From: Macrostomum lignano
Lineage: Eukaryota
Assembly (NCBI GenBank): GCA_002269645.1
Contig: NIVC01000896.1
Location: 279,487-343,486 of the forward strand
DNA length: 64,000 bases
Reading direction: 5' to 3'
Below the pieces are notes generated by a model. The model saw only the letters and a list, made by a program, of their open reading frames with translations, had not been told where the DNA came from and searched no databases. Position 1 is the stretch's first letter, and the number at the start of each line of letters is the position of its first letter. Shown here piece by piece: positions 2,573 to 31,904 of this stretch. A program made the translations under genes and the position numbers.

Positions 2573-5500
2573 GATAGAGAATCTCAGCAATTACCCCCCA
2601 TACTTGACATTTCAGCTATTCCACCGTAAGCTTGACATCCCAGCAATTTCCCTCAAGACTTGGCATCTCAGCAATTCTCCCCAAGCCTTGACATCTCAGC
2701 AATTCCCCCCAAGACTTGACATCTCAGCAATTCCCCCAAGCCTTGACATCTCAGCAATTCCCCCAAGCCTTGACATCTCAGCAATTCCCCCTAAGACTTG
2801 ACATCTCAGCAATTCCCCCAAGACTTGACATCTCAGCAATCCACCCAAGACTTGACATCTCAGCAATTCCCCCAAGACTTGACATCTCAGCAATTCCCCC
2901 AAGACTTGACATCTCAGCAATCCACCCAAGACTTGACATCTCAGCAATCCACCCAAGACTTGACATCTCAGCAATTCCCCCAAGACTTGACATCTCAGCA
3001 ATTCCCCCCAAGACTTGACATCTCAGCAATTCCCCCAAGACTTGACATCTCAGCAATTCCCCCAAGACTTGACATCTCAGCAATTCCCCCAAGACTTGAC
3101 ATCTCAGCAATTCCCCCAAGACTTGACATCTCAGCAATTCCCCCCAAGACTTGACATCTCAGCAATTCCCCCCAAGACTTGACATCTCAGCAATTCCCCC
3201 CAAGCCTTGACATCTCAGCAATTCCCCCCAAGCCTTGACATCTCAGCAATTCCCCCTAAGACTTGACATCTCAGCAATTCCCCCCAAGACTTGACATCTC
3301 AGCAATTCCCCCCAAGACTTGACATCTCAGCAATTCCCCCCAAGACTTGACATCTCAGCAATTCCCCCCAAGACTTGACATCTCAGCAATCCACCCAAGA
3401 CTTGACATCTCAGCAATCCACCCAAGACTTGACATCTCAGCAATTCCCCCCAAGACTTGACATCTCAGCAATTCCCCCCCAAGACTTGACATCTCAGCAA
3501 TTCCCCCCAAGACTTGACATCTCAGCAATTCCCCCCAAGACTTGACATCTCAGCAATTCCCCCAAGACTTGACATCTCAGCAATTCCCCCCAAGACTTGA
3601 CATCTCAGCAATTCCCCCAAGACTTGACATCTCAGCAATTCCCCCAAGACTTGACATCTCAGCAATTCCCCCCAAGCCTTGACATCTCAGCAATTCCCCC
3701 AAGCCTTGACATCTCAGCAATTCCCCTAAGACTTGACATCTCAGCAATTCCCCCCAAGACTTGACATCTCAGCAATTCCCCCAAGACTTGACATCTCAGC
3801 AATTCCCCCAAGACTTGACATCTCAGCAATTCCCCCCAAGACTTGACATCTCAGCAATTCCCCCAAGACTTGACATCTCAGCAATTCCCCCCCCCCAAGA
3901 CTTGACATCTCAGCAATTCCCCCCAAGACTTGACATCTCAGCAATCCCCAAGCCTGTACAGTGTATTGTTATGCATATTCTAACGTGTTAAGACCTCTAT
4001 CGGACTAAGACTTCAAAGCTTTCGATTTTCAATCGCCGATATGTAGCATAAATAGTTTTAATATATCTTTCAGGTGTCTGAGCACAGGCCTGAGCCTTAC
4101 GTAGTCTATGGCTACCTGAACCACAGCAACAAACGGTCCAGCAAGGCAATGTTCTTCGCCCAGAAAGCCCTGACCATCAGCCCGAACTCCGTGCACGCCC
4201 TCATCGTGTGCGGTTATGTAAGCATTAGAAATGGCAAAGAGCGCGATGCTCTGTCCTACTTCACCGAGGCCAGGAAGCTGGCGCCTAACAGCTTTGAAGT
4301 GCAGCACGGTATTGTGTGGACTTATATTAATCGGCACAAGTATAGGAATGCTATTGCTAAAGCTGAACTGCTGGTTAAACAGCTGGGTGAGTGTTTATTC
4401 AATCATAGTTGAGAATCGCCACTCAATCAACCATCATCAAGAATCGCCACTGAATCAATCATCATCAAGAATCGCCACTGAATCAATCATCATCAAGAAT
4501 CGCCACTCAATCAATCATCATCAAGAATCGCCACTCAATCAACCATCATCAAGAATCGCCACTCAATCAACCATCATCAAGAATCGCCACTCAATCAACC
4601 ACCATCAAGAATCGCCACTCAATCAATCATCATCAAGAATCGCCACTCAATCAATCATCATCAAGAATCGCCACTCAATCAATCATCATCAAGAATCGCC
4701 ACTCAATCAACCATCATCAAGAATCGCCACTCAATCAACCATTATCAAGAATCGCCACTCAATCAACCACCATCAAGAATCGCCACTCAATCAATCATCA
4801 TCAAGAATCGCCACTCAATCAATCATCATCAAGAATCGCCACTCAATCAACCATCATCAAGAATCGCCACTCAATCAACCACCATCAAGAATCGCCACTC
4901 AATCAATCATCATCAAGAATCGCCACTCAATCAATCATCATCAAGAATCGCCACTCAATCAACCATCATCAAGAATCGCCACTCAATCAACCACCATCAA
5001 GAATCGCCACTCAATCAATCATCATCAAGAATCGCCACTCAATCAATCATCATCAAGAATCGCCACTCAATCAACCATCATCAAGAATCGCCACTCAACC
5101 AACCATCATCAAGAATCGCCACTCAATCAACCATCATCAAGAATCGCCACTCAACCAACCATCATCAAGAATCGCCACTCAACCAACCATCATCAAGAAT
5201 CGCCACTCAATCAATCATCATCAAGAATCGCCACTCAATCAATCATCATCAAGAATCGCCACTCAATCAACCATCATCAAGAATCGCCACTCAATCAATC
5301 ATCATCAAGAATCGCCACTCAATCAATCATCATCAAGAATCGCCACTCAATCAACCATCATCAAGAATCGCCACTCAATCAATCATCATCAAGAATCGCC
5401 ACTCAAGTGACTCAACCAACCATCATCAAGAATCGCCACTCAATCAACCATCATCAAGAATCGCCACTCAATCAACCATCATCAAGAATCGCCACTCAAT

Positions 5501-6485
5501 CAACCATCATCAAGAATCGCCACTCAATCAACCATCATCAAGAATCGCCATTCAAGGAAAGTTTAACCTAAAATTACTTACAGTAGGTAAGAAAAACTTA
5601 ACATCCAAAATGATTGCCAGGCCGAAACCCTCGAACTCTGGGCATCTACGGCCTCGCCACATCCTACGAGAACAAGGACAAAGCCATCGAGATCCTCGCC
5701 GACGCCTTCGCCATGTTCAACGGTCGCGGCTGCCTGCCTGAGTGCGTCTCTGTGCTGGCTGAGTTGTACATGGAGAAGAAGCGCTACCCAGAGGCCAAGG
5801 CTCTGCTGGTGCAGAAGATTGAGCAGGTAAGTAGATGTCCTATCTCCCCATCACAGTGAAGATAATCCAGCATCCATCCTCCCCATCACAGGATAATCCA
5901 GCATCAATCCTCCCCATCACAGGATAATCAGCGTCCATCCTCCCCATCACAGGATAATCCAGCATCCATCCTCCCCATCACCGGATAATCCAGCATCCAT
6001 CCTCCCCATCACCGGATAATCCAGCATCCATCCTCCCCATCACCGGATAATCCAGCATCCATCCACCCCATCACAGGATAATCCAGCATCCATCCTCCCC
6101 ATCACAGGATAATCCAACCTCTATACTCCCTAGCAGTTAGTATTCTAAATGATCTCCCAATCAAAGTTGAGGCCCTCCAGAATCTTCCTAGTAACTGTAC
6201 TTCAGCGCTTAAGTATCCCAATTATCCCAAATGTGTATGTACCTGTCGCAGGAGCCAGCTGGTGAGACCACAGCGGAGCTGCACCGCCTGCTTGGCGACT
6301 GTCACTCCCGATGCGGCCAGCAGCAGGAGGCGCTGGTGCACTACGAGATCGCAATCAGATTGGACAGCAAAAATCGTAAAGCTCACGAAGGCGCGGTTGC
6401 TATGCGATCCGTGCTCAATTTGGACTCGCGAACGGCCGGCACTCATCAGCATCAAATGGATCACTCGGATGAGTTCTCTGATTGA
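1380..6485 (+). CDS. ANAPC7: Anaphase-promoting complex subunit 7 (TPR protein); first exon not located
   Basis: Exons 1380-1742, 2029-2478, 4074-4386, 5621-5826 and 6252-6485 have AG/GT boundaries and compatible phases. The spliced protein follows APC7 order: TIAENNERLLS..YVHLGDA, MEAIKGLL, SEHRPEPYVV..KAMFFAQKALTISPNSVHALI, ELHRLLGDC..AIRLDSKNRKAHEG. Confidence 0.85.
2481..2580. repeat. (GA)n microsatellite at the start of an ANAPC7 intron
   Basis: About 100 bp of GA repeats directly after the donor at 2479. Confidence 0.95.
2580..3950. repeat. ~27-bp satellite (GACTTGACATCTCAGCAATTCCCCCAA)n
   Basis: About 50 tandem units with a variable C-run. It generates spurious QDLTSQQFP/RLDISAIPP ORFs. 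Confidence 0.95.
4410..5555. repeat. 28-bp satellite (AAGAATCGCCACTCAATCAACCATCATC)n
   Basis: About 40 tandem units inside an ANAPC7 intron. It explains the 446-aa pseudo-ORF. Confidence 0.95.
5850..6115. repeat. ~31-bp minisatellite (ATCCTCCCCATCACAGGATAATCCAGCATCC)n
   Basis: About 8 tandem units in the last ANAPC7 intron. Confidence 0.9.
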
Positions 6486-8099: not shown

Positions 8100-10400
8100 A
8101 GAGAAATGATTAGATTGGATGACACAGAGGTCTCCATCAGAGAGATCAGTCCTCAGACAAGCCTGGAGATGGTTGGCAGCGAGGATAGCCGCTCTAGGGT
8201 GGCTGTTCCCCGAGCCACACACATAAAAATCAGATTAGCTAGAAGGGATGCTGCGCAACTTACCGTTGCGCATCCAGGGTTCCTGGATCAGAATGAGGTC
8301 TGGCCTGTACAGCTCAGCAATCTTCATCAGATTTACTGACGCAGATACGCAATGCTGTAAATTTATTTGCAGACAGAATGTCGCTCCTTTGGCAGCGTGG
8401 AGCTTAGTCATACTGCATTAAATGCAATAGCTGGCTAGAGCCCGGGCCATCAAGGAGACTTGGACAGCAAATCGTCCTCGTCCCAGGCCGTTGGGGCCTG
8501 ACTGGGAGATGGGAGTTGGTCGATGTCCATGGCCTCCTCACCCCAACCAGCCCCCCCCCCCTCCTCCCAGCAGAGTCTTCGGGCTCCGATGACAGAATAA
8601 AGGAAGCTTCCTCATCTGCATCTTTGCCTTCAGACCCCACCAGGGTGGCCGAGGAGAGCCCGGATTCCGAAGACCCGGCCTCGTCCTCAACTCCTTCTCC
8701 GGCTCGCAGGTTCGGTTCCCGGGGCTTGGCCGGAGCCGTCACCTCGGTCGCCGAATTGCTGCTAGCAGAGGGGCGAGACGCAGCTTTGGCTTTGGGATCG
8801 GCTTGCGCCTTTCCTTGGGCCTTAGACTGCGCCCCGCTCTTGCCGGAGATGCCGGAGTTGGCATTAGCCTTCCCTTTAGCAGACTTTCCTCGGCGCATCT
8901 TGAGCTTGAGGGCACCCAGCTGGAAAGAGGATCCGTTAGGGTACCGACTCGCCCAAGCGTTGGAGAGGCTTAGGACAATTGATTTACCCGTCTCCCCCCT
9001 GCGGACATTGCGGTGATTCACCATTCCACTAGCAGGGAGGTCGGGGTTCAGGCGCAGTAGGACCCGGCGAATAACGTGTGGTCCAGCTGCGGTGCTCTTT
9101 GCAGGGACAAAAACCACACATAGGGTATTGTCTTTGGACGCTGGCCTTCGCGAAGAAAAAGGGCTCCGCCGAGGTCAGCATCCAAGGAGACCGTCGGCAG
9201 CCGCTGGAGCAGCTGCTGAGCGTCCTCCTCACTGCTAGGAGCAATAAGAACGAAAGTGCTTCGCAGCACCATCCGCTCAATGCCGATGGAGATTCCCTCC
9301 TCGACAGTCAGCTCAATCAGATAGGAGTCAATAGCACTCCACACTTTTTGAAGCTGATCACTGGTCTAGTCCTGGTCGCGACCTTGGATGATCACTCCCG
9401 GGATTTTGGCCTTGGCCTTCGCGGCAAAGGTAGCTCCCGAAGGAACCTCCTTGTTGGCAGTGGCCATTTGTTGCGCCGTGGTTTCGGCCTCAGCAGCCGC
9501 AGCAGCATCTTTAGGGAGCGCCGCCGCTGAACTACCTGAGCTTCCACCGGCCGGCCCGTCTGGTTGCCTTGGGACGCCAGTCGCTTCAGCGTCCATGGTG
9601 GACGCCGCCGCTTTGGCCCCGCAGCTCCCTTCTTGGCCTGCCTTTTGGCGCGTTGCTTAGCGCGTTTGCGCTCAAGCCGAGCCCGCTGAGCTTCGTCGTA
9701 TCTGCCAGATTTGGCCGGTCCTTTAGGCTCAGAGCTCGCGGTTCCCTTAGATACACCAGCAGAGCTGGCAGGTCTTGGGGTACTTTGAGTTTGGTAGCTC
9801 TGGTCGGATCTGCCGGCAGAGCCAGCCAGTCCTTCCTTTGCCACGGTTGAATCAGTCGGTTGGGATCTGCCAGCAGGGCCGGCCGGTTCTTCGGACTGAG
9901 GTTAGGGTTTAGAAGGGTCCCCGTCCCTAGAATTAGCTTGGTTATCCATAGTCGGCTCAAAGGCCATGATAAAGGTTGGTGCAGTGGGCTACCCTCGAAG
10001 GGGCGCGGTACCCACCCGGCCGCTCCACCTGACCGGGCAGTAGGCCAAAAGAACCCTCAAGGCTGGCCCGACACCAGGAGGGGGACCGCTTGCGACCGGA
10101 CTACTCCCGGCCTTCCAGCCCATCGGCACGGTCAAACACCTTAGGCATTAGAGGGTACGTTGAGCAGTACCATGGCCTGCGGACTGGCGAGCCAGACCCG
10201 CATACCCAAGTTCGGCAAAAGCCACTGGATGGGTCTCCAGCGCCGGAGCCCAGTCAGTCCGGGTCTGCCTTGAACACTCGTGGGGACGAGTACCCTGGGT
10301 CGACTTGCGAGACAGCGTGGGGGGGGGTCTGCGGCTGCCAGCGGAAAATAGAGGGTGCAGACCTCCCAACGGCCTTTACCTATATAATATTACCTAGATA
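8100..10400 (-). mobile_element. R1/LOA-type non-LTR retrotransposon, 3' truncated (ORF1 plus start of the APE endonuclease)
   Basis: A basic ORF1 can be rebuilt across about 3 frameshifts (9844 to 8404). ORF2 starts at 8411, overlapping the ORF1 stop (ATGACTAA), and reads LQINLQHC..DLILIQEPW..HPRAAIL. It ends near 8105. The 5' boundary is approximate. Confidence 0.75.
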
Positions 10401-10992: not shown

Positions 10993-13900
10993 ATGAGCGA
11001 GGTTACCGATGCAAGAAATTCCATTAAACCGTCAAGTAAGTTTTCTTTTGAATGATGATTGATGAATGTAGTTCAAAATCCCATAGAAGAGTTTTTACTT
11101 TGTTACAATTTTGTATGACTGCATTTTTCTTGAGTTGATGAGTTTTGTAGTAGTTAATCATGATTATGAAGTAGTAGTAGTAAACTAGTCGAATTACAGA
11201 GGGAGCTGTCGAAAGTATTGTCGAGAAACTGCGAGCTATATTCAATATATTTATCTATTAGAGCCAGCACAAAGCCAAGAGAGACAAGCGACAAACCAGT
11301 CCAATAGCTTAGGGGGAAATTCAAAACGTTTTTAATCCTTTGAAACTTTAATTTTAAGATTTAAACAAAACAATGAAACTTAATCTGATTAACAGGTCAA
11401 CCAGTGCGTGCAGATATACAACTAATTAGTAGATGAATTATTAGTACCAATAATTACTCTTTTTAAAAACGATGTACAAGAACTCAAACCGTCACAACCT
11501 GTCGAATATTTACTTCTAAAATTAGGCCCAGGGGATAAAAGGTTAACACTACCGCAATGTTGTTTTTAATATTGCTTTCAGATCTTCCTGAAAGTAGTTC
11601 TGCCTATGACTTCAAATTTGAAGATGGACTATGTAAGTTTTACAGTCAAGTTTTGCTAAAACTTTTCTTCCCAAACGAACAAATATAAGCGATGTACAGC
11701 TTTTACACTGCGGAGACTGTGGCATTTTCAATTAGAATCCTGTATTTCTGCTTTGCTCAGAGCAGCGACCCTTATTACTCAAGTGTGAAAGTGAGCTCTG
11801 CTTGTTCAACACAAGGAAATATAACTTAACTAAGCTACAATAGCAATGAAAACATGCTGGTCTCTTGAATAGCCAACTATGAAAAACCCTATGCCAAATA
11901 ATGATATTTAAGGTTACCGAAGATTGGCACTGTTCTTCGACGCTGGCGGTGAGTCTGTGACAGATGAGTACGCCGACTTTCTGAAAGAGTGCAGTTTTAA
12001 CGTAAAGAGGAGCCTGGAACAGCAGTATGAAAGCAAACTGGACTCGTGTCTACCCGACTCCGTGAACAATTCCGAGGTCCAGCAGCTAATTGTAGTCGTG
12101 ATAGCTGGCAATGCTTTCATGAATGACGTCTTAGATTTCATGACAACGGATAAATTTCCCAACTGCCAAAACAGATGTTTATTATTTTGTCGCGCTGGTG
12201 AAGAAAGCCCGGATGACATGAAACTTGCGAGGGAATTTTCGAATGCGAATTTTAAATACAAGTGTACAACTATCGCTTACATCGTTGCTAAGGAACTTGA
12301 AAGCATACAGCGCTTCTATAAAAACTTTCTGGATGACTGCAAGTGCAAGTGGGAAACTACAAGTATATTTTCTATCCTGGAGACGCCATCAATCGCTTAC
12401 GAGTCCCTGTCTTTGTATCATAAGAAAGGAAATATTGGTGGTGATTTCCTGCGCGACATTTTCAAATTTATCAGGGAACCCAAGAGCAACCTTGATGAAG
12501 TTGATGCCTTACTAGCAGCATCACAGCAGACTGTTCAAGACAAACCGACTGATTGGATGCGCAAGAATGCCTCAATAATCTATCCTAATCGGCGCAATCC
12601 GAAAAAGCCTCGAGCGTTGGTCATCGTCAACTATGATTTAGAAGACTCCCTATACTTGGCTCTGCAAGTGGACTGCATCGGAGTTATGCGTATGCTAAAA
12701 AATCTTGGCTACATTGTAACAAACACGCAAACCCGCTCCAATGATGCCTTGGAAATAAGAATCAAGCTTTTTTCAGGAGATACTGAACACGGTGACTCCT
12801 GCATCCTTGTCGTGCTGTCCCAGACGCAGCAGCAGCTGAGCAGCATCACTGTCATGAATCTGTACAAAAGCTTGGCTATTGGCAAAAAGCTCGCGGCCAA
12901 GCCCCGACTCTTTATTCTGCACGAGTGGGATGTCCCAACACTGCAGACAGACTTTGTTACTGATGGTTTCAGCAGCGATACTTATGAGATCGTTAAAGAT
13001 GCTGTGGACGGTTTGCAGGCCTATTTTCGCAAGCATGATTCAACCATCAAAGTTCATCCACACAGCGGCATGGTGTTCGGTCGATCAGTTAGTAGCGATG
13101 TGACAAGAGCAGAGGGCAGCGCTTTTATTCAGACACTGTGCGAAACTTTCAGCCAGTATGGGCGCACAGAGGACGTGGCCTCCATGATTACCATAATTAA
13201 TGAGCACCAACGACTAGATGAATCTGTGCCAATGTGGTTTATTCAGACTGGCAAGCTCTTTTATCTCACGGGAACAGACGGAATCCAGGGTAAGAGCACT
13301 TTTTTAGCTCAATTCATGTATACTTTTCAATTCGAACTTAGCAAAAGTGACTTCAGTTTCGGCAACACGATAAATTATGACTGTCACTGTAACTGTCAAA
13401 GTGACTTAAAACTATTTGTGATCAATGTTATTGTAGGTCTGCAGCTCATCGTGTGCTTGCGCTACTGCCGACATTTTTTCGGTGATAGTGTGCAAAATTG
13501 TTGGTGCAAATTTTGGCCTCATGGTTCCTCCTCGTCGCCTTAAAAACAACGCGATCTTGAATGACAAGTCTGTGAATGACCGCGTTGGCCGTGGATCCCT
13601 TTATGCCGAGGTCCTTTGCTAGTCGTCTTCAGTCTCTCCCTGTTGTTTTCGAAATTAATCACTTTTTCCAAAGTCGAAATTGAAAATTTATAACTATGCA
13701 GAATTCATTATTGCATAATCATTTGCACTATTTTGCTTTTAGCTACCGGTCAGGAAGTTTCACAACAAAGTCTAGAGAAGAAATCTGAAGAACATAAATA
13801 CACTAGAATTGGTGAGTAGCATTATAAAATATCGAGACAGACATCTCAGAGATCTCATTCATTTATCTCAGCCATATGAAGCTATTGGCAAAATCTTTGC

Positions 13901-15626
13901 AATGACTACCTCTTCTCATTTCTGGTTGTATCTGTTCCGTTTTGCTGCCTTTAAATTGTTGCGATGTCCAAACATATTTTTATCCTATCAAGAATTATTT
14001 GATCTAAAAACCTTCTGATAAGTACATGTAGTTTAGAGAGATACGCTTGAGTTATAAACATTATTAGATTCATGAATTAAAGAACACCTGTGCCTGTATG
14101 AGCCAATAAAACTCGCTAATCTCAGCAAAGCTCAGCCGTACTTGCACTTTTTAATTTCAGATCGAACAGGATTTGCGATGATTCTCACCGAAGGACAGTT
14201 TGATGGGGCCAGCAACTATCAGATGTTTCTGGAGTATGCAGCCTTCAAAGTGCTCTTCGATTACACGGATGGCAATTCGAGCTCAATCAAGACAGCCATC
14301 AGGCTTCCAAAAGAAACTGAAGGAAATGTTGTCCTTTATCTAATTGTACGCACACATCGCAACGACAACGTCTTGCAAGAAATAGTCGATGAACTTTCTA
14401 AACAGCAATCGTCTCAAAAGTGCAGCAGTAGCATTTTGCTTATCTTCTGCGAAGTGTACGAGTCTGAAGAGAATTTCGCGAACACTCAGATGCCCAAGGA
14501 GCTACCCGAGAAGTTTAGCCTTGTCAGAGTTGGCGGGAGTCGGTGCGGCGTGACAGAGTTTCTGGACTCCCTGCTGGAATCTCCCACGGAGAACATCTCT
14601 CTCAATGGCAGCCTTGTGGTTGGTAGAGATTTTCATTCCACTTCAGTCATCGGTGAGCTAAACGGCATAATGCACTGCAAAGTCAATGACGAAAATCCAG
14701 GCTGGAGGAAGAGAATCACTTGGCTTGAAAACTTTTGTAAACAAGAGAGTTTAAAAAATCCGACTTCAACTGACGTTAGTGACGACACGCAGACAAGACC
14801 AGCAATAAGAGGTTCTCTCCGATTAGAGAGTTTTAGAAGTGAATGGAATGCACCTGGATTAGACACTCAAGAGTGCAAGGCTGTAGCACTCATCGTTCAC
14901 AACGTTGTCTTCCAGAAAAAGGAACTATCTACTCGGTTCGGAAGTCAACACGACTGCCAGCGAATGGCTGACACTTTGCTCAGGCTTGGCTACTCAGTGA
15001 GCATCAGGTCGAATCTCACCAAAGTAGAAATCGAAAGCGAATTAGACATGTTTTGCAGTGACGCACGACACGGCAGCTCAGTCGTAGTGGCTTCCATGTC
15101 TCACGGATGTCTCGGTGAAGTAGTTGGTTTCGACGGCGAATCAGCAAAGGAAAGTAAAATTCTAAAGAGAATTTCCAAAGGAAAAAACACCAGTGGAAAG
15201 CAGCAATTGGTCATCTTTCAGAACTGTCGAGACCCTGGTCGATTGCCTAAATCAGAGCTGTCGTTCTTTCCTGGCATGATCGTCGCTCACTCGACTTCGC
15301 CGGATGAAAGCAGCTACCGAATGACAGACAGAGGCAGTCGGTTCATCCAGTGTCTGTGCACTGTTCTCGACCTGTTCGCCGACAAGTGCGACATTGCATC
15401 AATGGTTCCTATCGTTAATTATGTGGTGCAAAACGCCACTTTTCATCTGGGCATCAGCCAGCTGCCCTGGTGGTCTGTACAGACAAGCAAGAAATTTTGG
15501 ATTCGAGTCAATGAGCCTCCTCAAAGCAGTCTTGAATCGCACCATCGAACCGATTCTGATAGGAAGCAAACAACAAATGACTGCAGGGCTCAGGTGACGG
15601 AACTTCTTCAAAAAATGCGGTTGTAA
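10993..15626 (+). CDS. Multi-caspase-domain protein 1 (~1001 aa): degenerate fold, pseudocaspase, degenerate fold, active caspase
   Basis: Predicted exons 10993-11035, 11582-11632, 11913-13289, 13743-13811 and 14161-15626 are all joined by phase-1 GT-AG introns and give an open frame. The last domain has SMSHG and FQNCR; the second has VLSQT and ILHEW instead. The two 5' exons are less certain. Confidence 0.75.
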
Positions 15627-15949
15627 TAATCTACGCAGAGGAAGTTCATCAATTTGAATATTTGTGGCGACTGAATAGATTTAATTGCTTATATTGTAGC
15701 TACCAGTGACTACTCTAATCCTTACTTTTTTTCTTAGCGGTTCAAGGTCTTTTAAGTTTCTATGAGAGTGGTAAATATGATTTTAATAGTCAATCTACGA
15801 GCGCAATATTCAGACCATTCAAAAAATTTACTATTGACAACTATTAGGACAATGATAGATAGCATGTTTATAGGCGTTTGTAAATTTGTTTTACTTTTTA
15901 GCAAAAAATTAAATTAATAAATTGCAAGTTAGCTTCTTAGTTAAAGGCA

Positions 15950-16285
15950 GGAGGCTGTTTACCCTGGTGCACTTTAAATAACATTGTCACACAGCCCGGC
16001 GAGAGGCATTACTGCCCATTCCGCCAACTCCCCTGAGCAGGCACACAAGCGCGCGGATATGTATACAGTCATCCGCAAAGGCACACACTCACACATGGGT
16101 GTACAATGGCTTGGATTTAATAATTTATATCGCTTAGGCATGTACACTTCACTGTGTCTTGAGGTTGGCCCTTGAGGCCGTTACTTGCACGAGAGCAGAC
16201 CCAAGCTGCTGACTGCACTTGGAATCGAGTATGGGCCGCTGGCACATCAGAACGCCGCGTTAGGGCACAAGGCTACGGCCCCTAT
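15950..16285 (-). mobile_element. Putative tRNA-derived SINE
   Basis: The minus strand begins GGGCCGTAGCCTTGTGCC (A-box-like), followed by ACTCGATTCC (B-box-like), and ends in a GGGTAAACAGCC-type tail. No target-site duplication confirmed. Confidence 0.4.
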
Positions 16286-17352
16286 AATAAATTACTACGT
16301 AGTATAATAAAATATTTAATATAAAAGAAGCGTGTTTCCATAAGTGCTTCGATGGAACAAATTTGTTTTTATTGTTTTAATGAAAGACGTTAGACTGACC
16401 ATTCTAAACAGTTTAGCTAGGCTAAGTTAAAATAGCAGCAGAATTGCTCTCGCTAAAACTAACCGATGCCGAACTTTTGACTGAGAAAACTGTTAGCCAG
16501 GTGTATCTTTTCATTATTAAAACTAATTATAAATGATTTAAAAAGTTTTTTTTCCAAATTTTATCTTCCACTATTCTAGATATTCGTAAATTTCGCTTTA
16601 AGCTTCTCAAAAAATGAATTCAAACATCCTAAATTGATGACCATATGGTGTGGAATCGTCAGACATGAAAAAAATTATTAAAGAAAGCATAAAGCATTAG
16701 AGTATGAGTACATGTTTGAGTTGTATTTTATGAAATCGATCTTTTTGAATGTATCTAAATCACAAACTGCGACTGGCCCTCGATCGTAGTGCATCACTGA
16801 GTTATATTTTTCTCTAACTCTGATTCAGTTATTTATAGTAAACATAAAACTAACAGGCTCGTAAATTGCTGCTTCCTAATTCAATTGTTTATTCAAATAT
16901 GAACGATTATCTAATCAAGTACAACAACTCAGTTCAAATAAATCAAAGGAAACTAAGAGTTTTCTGCTTGCCATCGAATTTCTGCTTTTGTGTTATTTTG
17001 ACAAACGTTTAGTATAACTTAGCTAGTTAATATATAGGTGTATCTACAAGTTTATAGGAGTACGACCGTATATAGTAGTATATATAGGAGTATATTAAGC
17101 CATTTTTCTCTAATCGATTGCAAGCAGGCAAGATATACACGGTTACTAGCTTAGCTAGTATATATATACGCTATATATACGCTAAATATATTATCCTATA
17201 TAGAATTGGTTTTAGATTACAATGCAGCTTTATTGTATATATATTAACTTTTCATTCAAAACTTCAAAATTCACCTTTTCTGATTACAGAGACAAAGTGC
17301 TACATAACTAAACCTTATCTGGTATTCGAAGAAACGATCGAACTCAGTATCG

Positions 17353-20300
17353 ATGGCTGATTTTTCTGACATATTTGAGACCGAAAGCCCAGCTACTAGT
17401 GAGTGCGAACCTAAAATAAAAAAATTAGCAAATAAATTAGAAACAAACATAGGCTGATTCATGACGTAGCGTGTTCGAGATGTAGTTAGCGATTAATTAA
17501 TTATTAGTTATTTACTAATTAGTTAGCTAGTTTAATTATTAGTAGTGTTGACACGCAGGGTACGAGACAAAACGCCGAGTTGAGGAGAGTACAAAAACGA
17601 GCGCGAGGCAACAATTTAAATTGGCGGGGAAATCCGATTCATTTAAACCCAAGATGTCTATCAAAAAAGTAATAATAACTTGGACTTAATTAAATAAAAC
17701 TTAAAGTACATTTTTTAATAAATAAATTACATTAAATTATTAGCTGGGGAACCTGCCAATTAATCAACTACAATAATTTTAAGTAATAAAAACTCAGATA
17801 GAAACTAACAATTTAAGATGCTAACAACGTCGTCACAGATTGATTCCTCTCAGTAATTTTTCCCACATTTAAATTTTCAGTATTGAACGAAATTTCAACA
17901 GCTGCAGGTCTATTAGTTGTTGTTTAAAACCATTTCTTTATATCTTAAATACTTTAATAAGCCGTATATGCTTCAAAATTGCAGAATCAACCGAAACACG
18001 CCGTGCAACTCGCAGTGAATTTGGTAAGATTGATTTGGGGCTTGTGCATCAAAATTGGCCGAGAATGGGTTTTTTGTGCGATTCACACCCCTGATGACCA
18101 CTACTCGAGGTGCAGAGAGTGTACAGGTTTGACGATTAGAAACTCTAGGGCTGCTGTTCAGTATTGGCGCGCTTGCGTGTGCTCAGGAGGCAGAAAATTT
18201 TTTTAGGGCCTTGGGCAGGGGGTGACATGAATATCCTACTAAATATTATAAGAAACATACAATTATTTACGAAGATTTTTTTTAGAATAATTTTTGTTTT
18301 AAATTGCAAAAAAAACTTACAGGCACCATTCAAGATGTACAGGCAGGATCGAAGCTTCCCAGCTGGCAGGGAACATTCGGTGAGCACTTCTCAAGGACAC
18401 ATTAAGTAGACTTTTTTAATTGTCCTTTGCACTTCAACTATACAAATAGCTTTGTAAAACTTTTACAATTGCAGCTCATCAAAGGCTACTGCTAGTATTC
18501 GCTGATGAGACTACAGCAAAGATGGAAAACTACATTGAATTTATGAGCACTCGTTGCGGCTTTTACACTGCGAAGCTCGCCCTGAACAGTCACCTTGCCG
18601 AATCCGAGACCCTGTCTCGAGCACCAGTCAGGCAGATTGTCTGCCTAGTAATTTTCTCCGCTTCGCAGCCACAGCGCTACATGAAGGACTACCTAGATTT
18701 TCTAAACCAATTTGACGAATCCGTGGATCAGCTACTGCTGTACTGCAACTTGTCCGAGACAGAGACCCAAATCGATCAGGATCTGCGAAATCAATTCTGC
18801 AGCAGTGCTTTTCCTTATCGAAAGTCTAGCATTGCTTACACTTTCGGAACTTCCTATGGAGTCGGACGATTTTTTGATAAATTTAAGAACGATTGCAACT
18901 TGAAATGGAATCGTACTGTTGGCCTTTGTGACGTCCTGGAATCACTTGATATGGACCAGTCGTCTGAACTTTACATTAAAAAGCCTAGAAGCGAAAAGTG
19001 CTTCTTCCCACGCGAAATATTTTACCCTTGCAGCTCACAAGAACTGATCAAAATAGCCGGCATTGAGTCCTTCACCAACCGAGTTGACCCGGATACTCTG
19101 GCGTTATACGGTGATTTTATATATCTGAACAGCCGCATACAAAAGCCGCAGGCCTTGATCGTTCTAAACATCAAACTAGAGAGCGGCAAGACAAACAAGT
19201 CAATGCACGCAGACTGGAGGCGCCTTCTTTGGCTGCTTGATAAGCTCCAGTTCGAGGTCAAAGACGTTCAAACAGACGCGTCAAGCTGCAGTCAGCTTGA
19301 AGAATGCGTGAAGACTTTTGCTGATTCTGAGTTGCACGGTGACTCTTGCTGTCTGGTTGTGCTCTCCGAAGGCTGGCTAGCAAACAGCTGCATTGGCAAC
19401 ATCAGTAAGAGCATGGCCTTCGGAAAGCTTATCAAGGGTAAGCCGAGGCTGATCATCATTCAGGAGTACCAACCGAAGTCCTCAGAAGCATCGGATGCTG
19501 CGCCGAAGTCGCTCCCCCAATTCCTGCCTGACGCAGTGGAAGCGATGCGATTGCAGTTCAGAAACGACAAGCCTGAGGTCAGAGTCCATCCGCTAAGCGG
19601 AACCGTCTGGTGTCAGTCCGAAGCGTCGGACACCGAAAGCGACAATGCGACACCGCTGATTGGATCCATCTGCGAGACTTTCATCAATCACTCAGCCATC
19701 GAGGATTTGGTTTCGATGATTTCAATCATCAACGAGAGACTGCAGGACGCCCCACCCACTTGGTGTGTGCAGACTGCCAAACTTTTCTATGTTGGAAATA
19801 CTGAGTTCACAGGGAGCGGAAGCGCTAGTAAGTTTATTTATGTCTTTAAAAATGAAGGAGATTGTTTATTTCAAGTTTACTGTCAATATTAATCTTCAAT
19901 TTCAGGCAAGGCTCAATCCGAAAATACCCCTGAAAATCCTGCACCTGCAACCGATCCGTTAGCGAATTTGCAGACAATGCAAGGCTTAGCAGCAGAGTCG
20001 GACAGGCTGCGTCCCATTCTCGATCAAAACAGTAAGTATGAACTAAAAATTTGAGACAAAAATCGATTTGGAGGTCCCAAAATTTTTGAAGCTATAAACT
20101 TAATGAATTTCAGATCGCCCTGGAGTAGCACTGATTCTCACTGAAGGCTTGTTCGACAAAGTCCGAGATTATCAAATGTTTCTGGATTTTGCCGGCTTTC
20201 AAGTAATCTCGGAACGAATCGACGGTATTGGCGCTTCTTTGAGAGAAATTGTGACTTCATCGGTTGCTCAAAGCCCGCTAGCAGTTGTGCTGATCGTTAA

Positions 20301-21546
20301 GAAGCACCAGGTCGGAGCCGGCGTAGATGATGTAATTGCGTGCATGTCGGAGACTGCAACCAAGCACGGAAACAGTTCCCTACTCATCTACTTTGAGATA
20401 CTAGATACTGGTGAGCCGCCTTCTGAGATTCGCTTACCGAATGAACTGCCAGAGAAGTTCAGCACAGTTTGCTACCAGGGCACTCGAGACCGAATCGATC
20501 TCTGCCTTGACTTATTTCTAAAAACGCCGAGAAAGAAACCTAAAAACTGTCCAATTGTTGGTTATAACTTTGAGAAGCTACGTTACAGGAAAAAAGAGCC
20601 AAAAATGATGTACCGATCCAGCGATGGAAATCCTGGCTGGAAGCTGGCGCTCAAATGGCCAGAGGGCCGAAATATCAGGGGTGACGACATCATGAAACAG
20701 GACTTATTCCGCACAGCCAGTATGCGAAAGAAATGGTTCCCAAAGAAACCTATTCTACAGAATGTCACTATGCAGAGCAGGGCTCTAATCGTTCAGAATG
20801 TTGTCTTCAAATCCAGTGAGATCAGATTTGGCACTCAGAACGACTGTCAGAGGCTGACGGACTGCCTTACAGGCTTGGGGTTTCGAGTGTCAATCAGAAC
20901 GAACCTCACGGCGGTTGAAATCTTGCAAACTGTGCAGCTCTTTGCTGGTGCCAACGACCACGGCCGCTCCTGCGTCTTGGCAATCATGTCCCACGGATAT
21001 CTGGGAAAAATTTTGGGATGCGACGAAAGGACTGTGAAAGAAGCAGATATTCTTGATCAGCTGAGCAAAGGCAGTGGGCTTCAGGGTAGATCAAAGTTTG
21101 TTGTGTTTCAAGCGTGCAGGCCATTGGAAGAACCACATTCCAGCAGCTCAGCAGAGCGATTGATTAGACCCTATCCCGACATGGTGATTGCTCACTGCAC
21201 CTCCCCAGAGGAGTTCGGTTATCGAAATCACTTCGAAGGCAGCTGGTTCGTGCAGAGCCTGTGCTCCGTGCTGAATGAATGCGGAGCCGATGCGGACATC
21301 CTATCAGTGATAACTGTGGTGAACTACATGGTTCTGACCTGCTTCAATCGGTCCGACTGTAAAGATGAGCGGACTCAGCAGCCGTGGTGGCTGCTGCAAA
21401 CGAGAGGCGCTTTTGTGCTTGGCAGCGGCACACCAATGGAAGAAATGGGCGACACCAATCTTATTTCAGCTGCAGACGCTGGGAGCCGAAAGTGTCGTGC
21501 AACAAGCATTTGGAAAAATTTGAAGGCCTTTTTTGCGAGGTCGTGA
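17353..21546 (+). CDS. Multi-caspase-domain protein 2 (~985 aa), paralog of protein 1
   Basis: Predicted exons 17353-17398, 18475-19827, 19906-20031 and 20114-21546 are all joined by phase-1 introns. The final domain has AIMSHG and FQACR; the second domain has VLSEG and IQEYQ. Confidence 0.78.
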
Positions 21547-26049: not shown

Positions 26050-26990
26050 ATGTCTCAGTCAGCGCAATAATCCTCTTCTCATCTAGTGCAAAAATCGATG
26101 TGTCAGGTAGTGCAATAGTCCCTTTCTAAGCTAATGCGATAATCCTCGTTTTGTCAAGTGCAGCAATCCTTGGCTTATCAAGTGCAATAATCCTTGGTTT
26201 ATCAAGTGCAATAATCCTTGGTTTATTAATTGCAATAATCCTCGGCTTATCAAGTGCAATAATTTATGGTTTATCAAGTGCAATCTTCCTTGGTTTATCA
26301 AGTGCAATAATCCTTGTCTTATCGTGCAATAATCCTTGGATTATCAAGTGCAATGATAATTTGCTTATAAAGTGCAATAATCCTTGGTTTACCAAGTGCA
26401 ATAATCTATGGTTTATCAAGTGCAATAATCCTCGGCTTATCAAGTGCAATAATCCTTGGTTTATCAAGTGCAATCTTCCTTGGTTTATCAAGTGCAATAA
26501 TCCTTGTCTTATCGTGCAATAATCCTTGGATTATCAAGTGCAATGATAATTTGCTTATAAAGTGCAATAATCCTTGGTTTACCAAGTGCAATAATCTATG
26601 GTTTATCAAGTGCAATAATCCTCGGCTTATCAAGTGCAATAATCCTTGGTTTATCAAGTGCAATAATCCTTGGTTTATCAAGTGCAATAATCTATCGCTT
26701 ATCAAGTGCAATTATCCTTGGTTTATCAAGTGCAATAATCCTTGGTTTATCAAGTGCAATAATCCTTGGTTTATCAAGTGCAATAATCCTTGGTTTATCA
26801 AGTGCAGTAATTCTTGGCTTATCAAGTGCAATAATCCTTGGTTTATCAAGTGCAATAATCTATCTCTTATCAAGTGCAATTATCCTTGGTTTATCAAGTG
26901 CAATAATCTATCGCTAATCAAGTGCAATGATCCTTTGCTTATTAAGTGCATGGTTAATAACCTTACTATAATTATCCAATAACCTTACTA
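26050..26990. repeat. 24-bp satellite (TTATCAAGTGCAATAATCCTTGGT)n
   Basis: About 35-40 units. It generates the FIKCNNPW pseudo-ORFs. Confidence 0.95.
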
Positions 26991-27589
26991 TAATTATCCA
27001 AAATGTTGATTTCCAATAATTAAAATTACTTTTTCTCATTTTGGCAAAATAAATTGCGATGAGTCAGAACTTGCATCAGACAAAAAAGTTTCTTTTTCAA
27101 CTCAAAACCCTTTCTCAATCAACAATCCTTGCCTATCCTTTCAATCACAAATTCTTAGTGCATATGTCATTGGCCTGAGCATATTCTGGTCTGTAGCAGG
27201 AACTCAATATGCCAATCCCTGACGGTCTTAGACTCCTGTATTAGCCGAACTCAAAGAATAAAACCTTTAATAAATACGCTGGTATTTTCTATTAGCAGAA
27301 ATCAACATCACTTGTGTGTACTATTTCATTATCTGAATTAAATGAGCTACTTCAGCCGTACTACTTGACGATCTGACAATCGCTCAAAAACCTAACCCCC
27401 TCCTTCCAACAATTCAGCCATCCCCCATGAGCCCCCATCAGCAATTCCCCCAGCAGGCCTTGACATGTCAGAAATTCCCTTAGTAAGCATTGACATCGCA
27501 GCAATTCCCCCAGTAAGCCTTGACATCACAGAAATTCCTCCAGTAAGCCTTGCATCTCAGCAATTCCCCCAGTAAGCCTTGGCACCTCA

Positions 27590-30500: not shown

Positions 30501-31023
30501 AGCGTGCCCTCTGGTACGGCTGGGGCTCGATGCTGGTGAGCCTCATGGTCCCCGGCGCCACCCGGAAGATCCAATTGGGCCAGCGCAGCAGCAGCTCGGC
30601 GGGCGGCGCCACGTTGCCGACCTCGCCAGTTTCGATCGCGACAGCGTTCAACTCGCCGACGCGCGCTCCGCTGCCCTCGCTTGGTCCTGCCGCATTTGGC
30701 CGCCGCAGCAGTTAAGCGCGGCTCTCCACTCTCACCACGAGGAGGTAGCGGCATTTATCTGCACCGTGGTGCAAATAAATTAAGACTGCAAATAAATTAA
30801 GACTGCAAATAAATTAAGACTGCAAATAAATTAAGACTGCAAATAAATTAAGACTGCAAATAAATTAAGACTGCAAATAAATTAAGACTGCAAATAAATT
30901 AAGACTGCAAATAAATTAAGACTGCAAATAAATTAAGACTGCAAATAAATTAAGACTGCAAATAAATTAAGACTGCAAATAAATTAAGACTGCAAATAAA
31001 TTAAGACTGCAAATAAATTAAGA
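27590..31023 (-). mobile_element. RTE-clade LINE, near full length (APE endonuclease plus RT)
   Basis: Endonuclease ORF 30754-29195 (VGTLNCRTL, ALQEV, AYAP, LGDLNA, LDHVL, SDHRLL) and RT ORF 29174-27639 (FVDFRKAFDS, GVLQGDTLAP, YADD) are separated by one missing C at ~29215. It has a (TTG)n 3' tail at 27590-27609 and a candidate TSD CACCTCAG on both sides. Confidence 0.9.
30772..31023. repeat. 17-bp tandem array (TAAGACTGCAAATAAAT)n at the RTE 5' end
   Basis: About 15 essentially identical units lie between the RTE 5' region and the TSD. Confidence 0.95.
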
Positions 31024-31904
31024 CACCTCAGCAATTCCCCCAGTAAGCCTTGGCATCTCAGAAATTCCCCAGTAAGCCATGGCATCTCAGCAATTCCCCC
31101 AGTAAGCCTTGGCATCTCAGAAATTCCCCAAGTAAGCCTTGGCATCTCAGCAATTCCCCCAGTAAGCCTGACATCTCATCATAAGCCTCATAAGCCTCAT
31201 AAGCCTTGAAATCTATATTTCGCCGAAAGCTTGGCCCTGTAAGCAATTCCCCGAAGAGCCAAAGCATTTATCTCTAAGTAATTCACCCCATGAGCCTTTA
31301 ATCTTAGCAATTCCACCAGGAATCCTTTATGGCTGATACGACGATTGTTATATAATTGAACCCAATCCTAACCATAACCTGCAGCCGAGTCACAGCCCAA
31401 GAATTTCAGCAATTCCACCATGAGCTTCTGAAGTCTAAAACTTTCCCCAATGAGCCTTAAAATTTAGCGACTAACCTATCTTGGCAATTCCACATGAGTC
31501 TTATGGTTGAAAACTAACCCTAACCCTGCCAAGTCACAGCGTTTCAGTAAGTCCCACCATGAACCATGGTATTTCAACAATTACCCTTGACAATTCTTGA
31601 ATTTCAGCTATTCCCTTATGAGCCTTTGAGATCTCAGTTAGTCTTATGTGAACCTTAGAATCTCAGCAATACCCAAAAAGCCACAGTCTACAGCATTACA
31701 AGGATCCCCGTGAGCGTTGACATTTCAGTGATTCCATAATGAGCCTTGATATCTCAGAAATTTCTCAGAAACTCATAATTGAGCCACAAAATTTAGGCAA
31801 TATCCCCAAGTCTTGCAATCACAGCAATTCCCCCCTAGCCTTGAGCCACAGTATAATCCAGATATCCCCCATGAGCTGTGACATTCCCCAATGAAGCCAG
31901 CAGC

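What the first reader, a model, noticed from the sequence alone, without database searches (positions are those of the whole stretch)
10993..21546. Two tandem genes each encoding four caspase-like folds in one chain
Seen: the ORF track shows four ORFs, but phase-compatible introns join them into two ~1000-aa proteins. Domains 2 and 4 are clear caspase folds. Domains 1 and 3 retain the skeleton: RxGxAxIL, YxxFLxxxxFxV (EYADFLKECSFNV, NYQMFLEYAAFKV, NYIEFMSTRCGF, DYQMFLDFAGFQV), a VVxI strand and IAY. No DED or CARD prodomain is evident. Established: animal caspases have one catalytic domain per chain and act as dimers. Inference: an (A-B)x2 internal duplication producing a covalently pre-assembled caspase multimer, an architecture I do not recognise.
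Basis: partly seen in the sequence, partly recalled or inferred. Interest (0 to 1): 0.82.

Follow-up and report, generated by a model that had tools for sequence, protein, structure and literature searches.

The report
Flatworm caspases with four caspase folds
Two neighbouring genes of the flatworm Macrostomum lignano each encode a roughly 1000-residue protein made of four caspase-like domains, only the last of which can cut. This extends the known two-domain 'pseudo-caspase plus caspase' design to four domains, but it rests on prediction and has not been tested.

Summary
The window is the Macrostomum lignano assembly GCA_002269645.1, scaffold NIVC01000896.1. The four ORFs splice through phase-1 GT-AG introns into two tandem genes of 1001 aa and 1017 aa. 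My six-exon model of gene 2 is identical to the transcript-derived NCBI protein BOX15_Mlig020397g1. For gene 1, the single-chain reading rests on models of an 87%-identical homeologue.

Each chain reads A-B*-A'-B:
- B (domain 4) keeps every catalytic and Asp-pocket residue of caspase-3.
- B* (domain 2) is a Pfam caspase domain that has lost all of them.
- A and A' (domains 1 and 3) match no Pfam family. AlphaFold2 models (pLDDT about 70) find c-FLIP, drICE, CED-3, caspase-3/7 and MALT1 as best PDB matches. Their profile aligns in register with caspase domains (P = 1.4e-4); a TIR identity was tested and rejected.

The A-B duplication is older than the gene duplication. The A module was found only in M. 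lignano among 1.84 billion representative proteins.

Two-domain precedents exist (coral caspase-X, mammalian caspase-16), so this is a new variant of a known kind. Each chain has one active site, not four. The mechanism is inferred: pseudo-domains act in cis as dimer partners or regulators, with conserved Asp sites in the linkers.

The parts
10993..15626 (+). Gene 1: five exons (10993-11035, 11582-11632, 11913-13289, 13743-13811, 14161-15626), 1001 aa, architecture A-B*-A'-B.
   Evidence: All sites are GT-AG and all introns phase 1. It is 87% identical over 100% of its length to P0001. Splice sites are conserved in the homeologous locus L002. NCBI annotates only a 318-aa fragment here, at 14670-15626.
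11913..12490 (+). Gene 1 domain 1 (A): a degenerate caspase-like fold. It has no catalytic His but keeps LLFCRAG (12179-12199) on the active-site strand.
   Evidence: The AF2 model has pLDDT 70.3 and pTM 0.71. Foldseek's best hits are c-FLIP 3h13, drICE, CED-3 and caspases 3, 4, 6 and 7. hhalign results are.
12494..12505 (+). DEVD|A motif (aa 226-229) in the domain 1 to domain 2 linker; a candidate caspase cleavage site.
   Evidence: The motif is conserved in the homeologue P0001/P0014. That it is cleaved is an inference.
12551..13289 (+). Gene 1 domain 2 (B*): a pseudo-caspase. The catalytic His is replaced by Gln (LSQTQ, 12815-12829) and the catalytic Cys by Trp (LHEWD, 12917-12931). It begins at a conserved Asp (KPTD|W).
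   Evidence: Pfam PF00656, E = 4e-9. Residue table.
13743..13811 (+). Gene 1 linker exon (23 aa). Its 3' end (KYTRI) supplies the N-terminal peptide of domain 3.
   Evidence: It is retained, with an in-frame 33-nt insertion, in the homeologue. One older model (P0002) skips it in frame.
14161..14819 (+). Gene 1 domain 3 (A'): a degenerate caspase-like fold. It has a His at the catalytic-His column (VRTHRND, 14346-14366) and a Cys on the active-site strand (LIFCEV, 14439-14456), but no Asp pocket.
   Evidence: The AF2 model has pLDDT 68.2, with the core at 75-90. Foldseek's best hits are MALT1, caspase-3/7, drICE and CED-3. hhalign result.
14820..15626 (+). Gene 1 domain 4 (B): a catalytically intact caspase with H828 (SMSHG, 15093-15107), C869 (FQNCRD, 15216-15233), R772 and R900, plus a C-terminal tail.
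   Evidence: Pfam E = 6e-31. Best PDB sequence match is caspase-3, E = 4e-14. Residue table. Ka/Ks is 0.25.
17353..21546 (+). Gene 2: six exons (17353-17398, 17985-18023, 18323-18379, 18475-19827, 19906-20031, 20114-21546), 1017 aa, same architecture as gene 1.
   Evidence: The translation is identical to P0004 = BOX15_Mlig020397g1. It is called as one gene in GCA_002269645.1.
18475..19091 (+). Gene 2 domain 1 (A) and its linker (LLYCNLS at 18735-18755).
   Evidence: Aligns with gene 1 domain 1. The A profile hits P0004 in 2 stretches.
19092..19827 (+). Gene 2 domain 2 (B*): a pseudo-caspase (LSEGW at 19362-19376, IQEYQ at 19458-19472).
   Evidence: Pfam E = 5e-5. Residue table.
19906..20031 (+). 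Gene 2 linker exon (42 aa), flanked by introns of 78 and 82 nt that contain no poly(A) signal.
   Evidence: It is part of the transcript-derived NCBI product.
20114..20718 (+). Gene 2 domain 3 (A') and its linker. It has a His at the catalytic-His column (VKKHQVG) but Phe in place of the Cys (LLIYFEI).
20719..21546 (+). Gene 2 domain 4 (B): a catalytically intact caspase with H834 (IMSHG, 20983-20997) and C875 (FQACRP, 21106-21123).
   Evidence: Pfam E = 2e-34. Residue table.

Best explanation
**Shown**
- These are two tandemly duplicated genes of Macrostomum lignano.
- Each encodes a single chain of about 1000 aa made of four caspase-hemoglobinase-type domains in the order A-B*-A'-B.
- The chain arose by an internal duplication of an A-B unit, and that duplication predates the gene duplication.
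- B (domain 4) is a complete Asp-specific caspase: it keeps His, Cys, the oxyanion Gly and the R64/Q161/R207 pocket in caspase-3 numbering.
- B* (domain 2) is a recognisable caspase domain with all catalytic and pocket residues replaced.
- A and A' are far more degenerate caspase-like domains and are restricted to this lineage.

**Inferred**
- The protein works as a self-contained caspase. One or more pseudo-domains pack against the single active domain in cis, taking the place of the second subunit of a caspase dimer. The models for this are c-FLIP with procaspase-8, and the intramolecular pairing proposed for coral caspase-X and mammalian caspase-16.
- That pairing would tune activity, either damping or licensing it, without CARD or DED adaptors.
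- The catalytic domain's intersubunit loop is short (17-22 aa, against 30 in caspase-3) and the motif scans found no candidate cleavage motif in it. Control by loop cleavage therefore looks unlikely.
- Every A-to-B linker carries a conserved Asp at the position of the caspase-3 prodomain site Asp28. Gene 1 also has DEVD|A between domains 1 and 2. Processing at the linkers is the likely switch.
For: **One chain**
- The gene 2 model equals the transcript-derived NCBI protein (method in PMC5730564).
- Homeologue models P0001 and PAA47018.1 read across the D2-linker-D3 join of gene 1.
- A third paralogue, PAA73902.1, is also a fused chain running from a truncated D1 through D4.
- All splice sites are conserved in L002, the large exons are better conserved than most introns, and the exon indels in gene 1 exons 1, 3 and 4 are in frame.
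- The 78- and 82-nt introns of gene 2 contain no poly(A) signal.

**Domains**
- Pfam hits on D2 and D4; residue table.
- AF2 and Foldseek for D1 and D3.
- hhalign of A against B gives P = 1.4e-4 in register, with the A-domain C-R on caspase C163-R164. The reversed control gives P = 0.26.

**Order of duplications:**

**Selection:** Ka/Ks against the homeologue is 0.25 for gene 1 D4 and 0.57-0.73 for gene 1 D1-D3.

**Linker Asp and DEVD:**

**Precedents for cis pairing:** PMC4715348 and PMC12198278.
Against: - No inter-domain geometry was computed, because both AF2 jobs went on single domains.
- The A-domain models are only moderately confident (pLDDT 68-70). They rest on a 9-sequence alignment from one species.
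- TM-scores are 0.5-0.6, and generic alpha/beta folds appear not far below the caspases in the domain 3 list.
- Neither Pfam nor a profile search of PDB sequences recognises A as a caspase.
- Ka/Ks of 0.57-0.73 for gene 1 D1-D3 shows weak constraint.
- The gene 1 linker exon is no better conserved than its flanking introns.
- NCBI annotates only a 318-aa fragment for gene 1.
- Intron 4 of gene 1 contains AATAAA and ATTAAA hexamers.
- No protein-level, activity or expression data were found.
Confidence: 0.6

Rival explanations
1. The locus yields separate two-domain proteins (A-B* and A'-B). They would arise by intron retention or polyadenylation after domain 2 plus spliced-leader trans-splicing at the linker or domain 3 acceptor. 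The 1000-aa ORFs would then be precursor or polycistronic artefacts.
For: - About 7% of M. lignano transcripts are polycistronic precursors, and trans-splicing is common (PMC5730564).
- Stand-alone A-B proteins exist, for example P0010 at 580 aa with an active B domain.
- The gene 2 linker exon has an in-frame Met.
- Gene 1 is annotated only as a 318-aa fragment.
- AATAAA and ATTAAA hexamers lie 55-85 nt upstream of the domain 3 acceptor of gene 1.
- If the introns are retained, the ORFs stop after 84 and 21 extra codons.
Against: - The annotation pipeline cuts transcripts at mapped trans-splice and poly(A) sites, yet it leaves gene 2 as one 1017-aa gene.
- No stop codon ends domain 2 before its donor site in gene 1, gene 2, the homeologues or paralogue P0009.
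- All junctions are phase 1, and the frame survives a 33-nt indel.
- Gene 2 introns 4 and 5 are 78 and 82 nt long with no poly(A) hexamer.
- About 0.4 such hexamers are expected by chance in gene 1 intron 4 (my estimate from base composition).
Confidence: 0.15
2. Domains 1 and 3 are not caspase-derived. They would be another flavodoxin-like alpha/beta module such as TIR, which shares the first five beta/alpha elements with caspases. The chains would then hold two caspase folds, not four.
For: - UniProt names one family member (A0A1I8IZE5, P0019) a 'TIR domain-containing protein'.
- Pfam finds no caspase match in the A domains.
- The hhalign probability is only 8-53%.
- The models are of moderate confidence.
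- PurE, B12-binding and Rossmann-type folds appear in the Foldseek lists.
Against: - The top 8 Foldseek hits for D1, and 12 of the top 14 for D3, are caspases or paracaspase, aligned over the full length at TM 0.5-0.6.
- The only TIR hit is at rank 46, with E = 0.09 and TM 0.36.
- hhalign of A against a TIR alignment gives P = 0.13-0.33 over 15-18 columns. Against caspase domains it gives P = 1.4e-4 over 83 columns in the correct register.
- The models have the caspase-specific C-terminal alpha-alpha-beta-6 elements.
- The motifs LALIxTE, LLFCR and K-Y-x-x-x-D-R-x-G match the caspase beta-1 strand, active-site strand and N-peptide.
Confidence: 0.15
3. The three pseudo-domains are functionally inert. 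Together they form an oversized prodomain that is clipped off at the conserved Asp sites, and only domain 4 matters, dimerising in trans like an ordinary effector caspase.
For: - Ka/Ks is 0.57-0.73 for gene 1 D1-D3, against 0.25 for D4.
- A conserved Asp sits at the caspase-3 D28-equivalent position before every B-type domain, and gene 1 has a DEVD site.
- Domain 4 is most similar to effector caspase-3.
- Paralogue P0005 does without A'.
Against: - The A and B* modules have stayed open and alignable across at least four paralogue lineages at 20-35% identity, with conserved core motifs. That is longer than inert sequence would be expected to survive.
- Ka/Ks is still below 1.
- In coral caspase-X, the tested precedent, the inactive domain measurably damps activity (PMC4715348).
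Confidence: 0.25

Closest known systems
Coral caspase-X (Acropora millepora; Moya et al. 2016, PMC4715348)
   Same: One polypeptide carries an N-terminal caspase domain lacking His and Cys, followed by a typical active caspase domain. There is no CARD or DED. It is a lineage-restricted, multi-copy family. The inactive domain is proposed to pair with the active one in cis through beta-6, like c-FLIP with caspase-8.
   Different: Caspase-X has two domains, not four. It is an independent origin: the A-domain profile finds nothing outside M. lignano. Caspase-X has cDNA and cell-death assay support, and nothing comparable exists here. A four-domain A. digitifera prediction mentioned in that paper was described as atypical and carries an additional glycosyl-transferase domain.
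Mammalian caspase-16 (Eckhart et al. 2025, PMC12198278)
   Same: Its prodomain is a duplicated caspase domain that lost the catalytic site, while the C-terminal domain keeps it. It arose by exon duplication. The chain has a single active site and cis dimerisation is proposed.
   Different: It has two domains. It belongs to the vertebrate caspase-14/15/16 clade. [quoted passage not shown]
c-FLIP(L) / procaspase-8 heterodimer (PDB 3H11, 3H13)
   Same: A pseudo-caspase acts as the dimer partner of one active caspase. The c-FLIP protease-like domain is the best structural match of the domain 1 model.
   Different: c-FLIP acts in trans and is recruited by tandem DEDs. No DED is present here, and flatworms are reported to lack FADD (PMC11463336).
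Effector caspases 3/7, drICE, CED-3 (MEROPS C14A)
   Same: Domain 4 has all the catalytic and S1 residues, and its best PDB sequence match is caspase-3.
   Different: Domain 4 has a much shorter intersubunit loop with no candidate cleavage motif found in it. It is preceded by about 750 residues of pseudo-caspase domains instead of a short prodomain.
Separase (pseudo-protease domain plus active protease domain)
   Same: Two caspase-type folds lie in one chain, one of them inactive and supporting the active one. The C. elegans separase chain appears among the Foldseek hits at rank 26.
   Different: It belongs to a different clan member family (C50), with a large helical N-terminal region and securin regulation. 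No sequence relationship was detected.

Membership tests
Caspase (Peptidase C14A), domain 4 | Sequence match to Pfam PF00656 above the gathering score | tested here: met
   108 and 120 bits against a cut-off of 21.4.
Caspase (Peptidase C14A), domain 4 | Catalytic His-Cys dyad in SHG and QxCR motifs | tested here: met
   SMSHG and FQNCRD in gene 1; IMSHG and FQACRP in gene 2.
Caspase (Peptidase C14A), domain 4 | Asp-specific S1 pocket (R64, Q161, R207 in caspase-3 numbering) | tested here: met
   All three residues are present in g1_D4 and g2_D4.
Caspase (Peptidase C14A), domain 4 | Proteolytic activity after Asp; activation by dimerisation or linker cleavage | not testable with these tools
   Needs recombinant enzyme. 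The intersubunit loop is short (17-22 aa) and the motif scans found no candidate cleavage motif in it.
Pseudo-caspase, domain 2 | Caspase-domain sequence match with the dyad and pocket residues lost | tested here: met
   PF00656 at E = 4e-9 and 5e-5. The catalytic His is replaced by Gln or Glu, the Cys by Trp or Tyr, and R64 and R207 are lost.
Caspase-hemoglobinase fold, domains 1 and 3 | Sequence-profile match to caspase families | tested here: inconclusive
   No Pfam hit and no PDB-sequence hit. hhalign against the family's caspase domains plus caspase-3 gives P = 1.4e-4 at 53% probability, in register; the reversed control gives P = 0.26.
Caspase-hemoglobinase fold, domains 1 and 3 | Predicted 3D fold superposes on solved caspases better than on other folds | tested here: met
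   D1: c-FLIP, drICE, CED-3 and caspases, E from 1e-4, TM 0.49-0.59. D3: MALT1 and caspases, E from 6e-4, TM up to 0.50 by query and 0.61 by target. Model confidence is moderate (pLDDT 68-70).
Tandem pseudo-caspase/caspase chain (caspase-X or caspase-16 type) | Inactive caspase-like domain or domains N-terminal to one active caspase domain in one polypeptide | tested here: met
   Gene 2 equals a transcript-derived 1017-aa product.
Tandem pseudo-caspase/caspase chain (caspase-X or caspase-16 type) | Common descent with caspase-X or caspase-16 | tested here: not met
   The A-domain profile finds only M. lignano proteins among 1.84 billion representatives. The resemblance is one of design, not orthology.
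Tandem pseudo-caspase/caspase chain (caspase-X or caspase-16 type) | Intramolecular pairing of the inactive and active domains through beta-6 | not testable with these tools
Initiator caspases and c-FLIP | CARD or DED prodomain | tested here: not met
   No CARD or DED hit in any ORF or full-length protein.
TIR domain (rival identity for domains 1 and 3) | Profile or structural match to TIR domains | tested here: not met
   No Pfam TIR hit. hhalign P = 0.13-0.33. The only Foldseek TIR hit is at rank 46 with E = 0.09.
Paracaspase (MALT1-like) | Death domain and Ig domains; specificity not directed at Asp | tested here: not met
   No such domains were found. Domain 4 has the caspase R/Q/R Asp pocket. 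MALT1 appears only as a fold match for D3.

The most novel reading that the evidence does not exclude
A single polypeptide carries a complete, pre-wired caspase assembly. Three pseudo-caspase domains, two so degenerate that sequence methods miss them, serve as built-in dimer partner and regulators for one active domain. Activation then needs no CARD, DED or FADD-type platform and is switched by cleavage at conserved Asp sites in the linkers. This would be a lineage-specific reinvention of caspase control in a flatworm group reported to lack the extrinsic-pathway adaptors.
Probability: 0.3. Interest if true: 0.75.

Novelty: new variant of a known kind. Interest (0 to 1): 0.6.

Why it matters
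Caspases need a second caspase-fold subunit to be active, and how that partner is supplied is the core of their regulation.

- **Known solutions.** Trans solutions are homodimers and c-FLIP with caspase-8. Two cis solutions have been described, coral caspase-X and mammalian caspase-16, and caspase-16 was called unique among known caspases in 2025.
- **What would be new.** A verified four-fold chain with a single active site would be the most extreme cis arrangement known. It would show that the design arose independently at least three times.
- **A natural series of architectures.** M. lignano carries A-B, A-B*-B and A-B*-A'-B paralogues, so the contribution of each pseudo-domain can be dissected in one organism.
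- **A tractable organism.** The literature read here reports a transgenesis method (PMC5730564) and RNAi knockdowns (PMC12732829) in M. lignano.
- **A practical correction.** Public annotation under-describes these genes. Gene 1 is called as a 318-aa fragment, and the A domains are unannotated or labelled TIR.

Tried and rejected
1. **Pfam on the A domains.** Scans of the ORFs and of all nine A-domain sequences at E up to 10 gave no caspase, TIR or other meaningful family.
2. **A-domain profile against PDB sequences.** It returned only chance hits to phage portal proteins.
3. **TIR identity for the A domains.** This was prompted by a UniProt name. It was rejected on hhalign and Foldseek results.
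4. **Word-indexed homology searches.** They returned only M. lignano proteins, so the alignments for structure prediction stayed shallow at 9 rows.
5. **First exhaustive-search submission.** It was repeated with single-exon pieces.
6. **First gene 2 model.** It lacked one 57-nt exon, and my first guess at that exon's borders was off by 2 nt. It was corrected against P0004.
7. **Expression or function data.** Searching by Mlig gene ID found nothing in full texts or in the supplements of one paper.
8. **Four independent genes.** This was rejected as the main reading but kept as a rival at 0.15.
9. **Gene 1 as a pseudogene.** This was rejected: all 1001 codons are open, and domain 4 has Ka/Ks 0.25.

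Full report
**Where the window comes from**

Window 7353-31546 is 100% identical to Macrostomum lignano assembly GCA_002269645.1, scaffold NIVC01000896.1, positions 286839-311032. By arithmetic, the window is the last 64 kb of that 343,486-bp scaffold.

**Checking the observation**

Reading the DNA and assembling the exons confirmed the joins. Each one has a consensus GT donor and a pyrimidine-rich AG acceptor, and all introns are phase 1.

- **Gene 1** has exons 10993-11035, 11582-11632, 11913-13289, 13743-13811 and 14161-15626, and encodes 1001 aa.
- **Gene 2** needed one extra 57-nt exon (18323-18379). With it, the six-exon model encodes 1017 aa and is identical to NCBI BOX15_Mlig020397g1 (P0004).

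**Is it really one chain?**

NCBI models for this assembly are transcript-derived. They come from StringTie/TACO transcripts cut at experimentally mapped trans-splice and poly(A) sites, with ORFs called by TransDecoder (PMC5730564). The gene 2 joins therefore have RNA-level support.

Gene 1 is weaker. NCBI calls only a 318-aa fragment there, at 14670-15626. The fused reading of gene 1 rests on its 87%-identical homeologue:
- UniRef A0A1I8J0J1 (1016 aa) covers 100% of my model.
- The transcript-derived PAA47018.1 (660 aa) reads straight through D2, the linker exon and D3.

The homeologous locus L002 has the same tandem gene pair. All GT/AG sites are conserved there. The large exons are 93-99% identical, against 81-91% for all but one short intron. 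Indels in gene 1 exons 1, 3 and 4 are 6, 9 and 33 nt. Gene 2 introns 4 and 5 are 78 and 82 nt long and contain no poly(A) hexamer. Gene 1 intron 4 contains two such hexamers, about what chance would give.

**Architecture**

Each half of each chain is an A-B unit, and the units align end to end. Between the two genes, AB1 is 30% identical to AB1 and AB2 is 36% identical to AB2, while AB1 and AB2 are only about 22% identical. The internal duplication is therefore older than the tandem gene duplication. Each A-B unit sits in one large exon entered through a phase-1 intron at the homologous position, just before beta-1 of the A domain. That fits exon duplication, or fusion of two tandem genes.

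**B-type domains (2 and 4)**

Pfam PF00656 hits all four B-type domains. Aligned with caspase-3:
- Domain 4 of both genes keeps R64, H121, G122, Q161, C163, R164 and R207. It is a complete Asp-specific caspase, and its best PDB sequence match is caspase-3.
- Domain 2 has lost every catalytic and pocket residue, so it is a pseudo-caspase.

Each chain therefore has exactly one competent active site.

**A-type domains (1 and 3)**

Sequence methods largely fail on these. Pfam finds nothing, and a profile search of PDB sequences finds nothing relevant.

Structure prediction gives a clearer answer. AlphaFold2 on a 9-row alignment gave these models:
- **Domain 1:** pLDDT 70.3, pTM 0.71. The element order is beta-alpha repeats ending in alpha-alpha-beta, as in a caspase domain.
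- **Domain 3:** pLDDT 68.2, pTM 0.70, with the core at 75-90.

Foldseek against the PDB then gave these matches:
- **Domain 1:** the c-FLIP protease-like domain ranks first (3h13, E = 1.1e-4, TM 0.57, aligned over the full length). drICE, CED-3, caspases 3, 4, 6 and 7 and MALT1 follow. Unrelated alpha/beta folds trail at TM about 0.3.
- **Domain 3:** MALT1, caspase-3/7, drICE, CED-3 and caspase-8 fill 12 of the top 14 places, with TM up to 0.50 by query and 0.61 by target.

Profile-profile comparison agrees. Eleven A domains against ten family B domains plus caspase-3 give P = 1.4e-4 at 53% probability, over 83 columns in the correct register. The conserved A-domain 'LLFCR' falls on caspase 'IIQACR'. 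A reversed-sequence control gives P = 0.26. D3-type domains also carry a His at the catalytic-His column.

UniProt labels one family member as TIR-containing. I tested that rival: hhalign against TIR domains gives P = 0.13-0.33, and the only TIR structure hit is at rank 46. I reject it.

I conclude that A and A' are highly degenerate caspase-derived domains, with moderate confidence.

**Family and distribution**

An exhaustive HMM search with the A profile over 1.84 billion representative proteins found 7 proteins, all from M. lignano. The family contains a series of architectures:

| Protein | Length | Architecture |
|---|---|---|
| PAA82799.1 | 580 aa | A-B, with an active B |
| PAA86652.1 | 691 aa | A-B*-B |
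| PAA69179.1 | 611 aa | A-B*, then the start of another unit |
| Genes 1 and 2 | 1001 and 1017 aa | A-B*-A'-B |
| PAA73902.1 | 838 aa, N-truncated | partial D1, then B*-A'-B |

**Selection**

Ka/Ks against the homeologue for gene 1 is 0.57 (D1), 0.63 (D2), 0.73 (D3) and 0.25 (D4). The active domain is clearly constrained. The pseudo-domains are constrained only weakly over this short timescale, although they have persisted across paralogues that are only 20-35% identical.

**Mechanism (inferred)**

- Domain 4 has a short intersubunit loop (17-22 aa, against 30 in caspase-3), and the motif scans found no candidate cleavage motif in it. Activation by loop cleavage therefore looks unlikely.
- Every A-to-B linker has a conserved Asp. 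It aligns with the caspase-3 prodomain site Asp28 for most units, and lies within two or three columns of it for the D4-type units.
- Gene 1 has DEVD|A at aa 226-229, conserved in its homeologue.
- By analogy with c-FLIP and caspase-8, and with the cis models proposed for coral caspase-X (where the inactive domain damps killing; PMC4715348) and for caspase-16 (PMC12198278), I propose the following. The pseudo-domains act in cis as dimer partner or regulator of domain 4, and linker cleavage acts as the switch.
- No inter-domain geometry could be computed here.

**Novelty**

The proteins are in public databases as hypothetical or 'caspase p20 domain-containing' entries. A survey of lophotrochozoan caspases reports no unusual M. 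lignano caspase other than one with a kinase-like prodomain (PMC11463336). I found no verified report of a chain with more than two caspase folds. The nearest is one atypical four-domain coral gene prediction.

I class this as a new variant of a known kind: tandem pseudo-caspase plus caspase, of independent origin. It is interesting to specialists, but it rests on moderate-confidence models and has no functional data.

Noticed in passing
window 14670-15626 (NCBI gene call) versus 10993-15626: The public annotation of this scaffold calls gene 1 only as a 318-aa single-exon fragment (domain 4). The sequence supports an intact 1001-aa, five-exon gene.
   Followed up: yes
P0019 = UniRef100_A0A1I8IZE5 (M. 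lignano, gene-2-like): UniProt names this member a 'TIR domain-containing protein'. The label presumably comes from a borderline profile match to an A domain. TIR identity was not supported by hhalign, Pfam or Foldseek.
   Followed up: yes
L002 (NIVC01003259.1, reversed), about 15800-19800: Relative to the window, the homeologous copy of gene 2 has three separate 1-nt deletions in the large exon and one in-frame stop. It is annotated only as a 150-aa fragment. It is either a decaying copy or carries residual long-read indel errors.
   Followed up: partly
window 27639-30754 (- strand): Two adjacent ORFs carry an endonuclease/exonuclease/phosphatase domain and a reverse transcriptase domain, so this is a non-LTR retrotransposon in a GC-rich (0.65) stretch. 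It is flanked on both sides by arrays of a roughly 30-nt unit (27438-27592 and 31027-31178). Those arrays are related to the 27-nt minisatellite at 2581-3949, and a reverse-complement copy lies at 41940-42078.
   Followed up: partly
window 37507-38781 (- strand): An apparently intact 424-aa Tc1/mariner-type transposase with Sleeping Beauty-like HTH domains and a DDE_3 domain.
   Followed up: no
window 50397-51584 (- strand): An ORF with an integrase core (rve) domain at borderline score. It is probably a remnant of an LTR or retrovirus-like element in an AT-rich region.
   Followed up: no
window 2581-3949, 4412-5555, 26135-26950, 42646-43269: Large minisatellite arrays: 27 nt x 50, 28 nt x 40, 24 nt x 34, and a 26-nt G-rich array. 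They explain the extreme GC-skew blocks. The 446-aa ORF at 4231-5571 runs through the 28-nt array and is probably a product of the repeat rather than a gene.
   Followed up: partly
window 8400-10400: A GC-rich (0.56) stretch just upstream of gene 1 with many overlapping low-complexity ORFs on both strands. Its nature was not determined.
   Followed up: no
P0018 = UniRef100_A0A1I8GZQ7 (1821 aa), P0006 (1101 aa): Older-assembly gene models in this family are much longer or are mosaics. They are probably read-through merges of adjacent paralogues, so domain counts taken from those entries would be unreliable.
   Followed up: no
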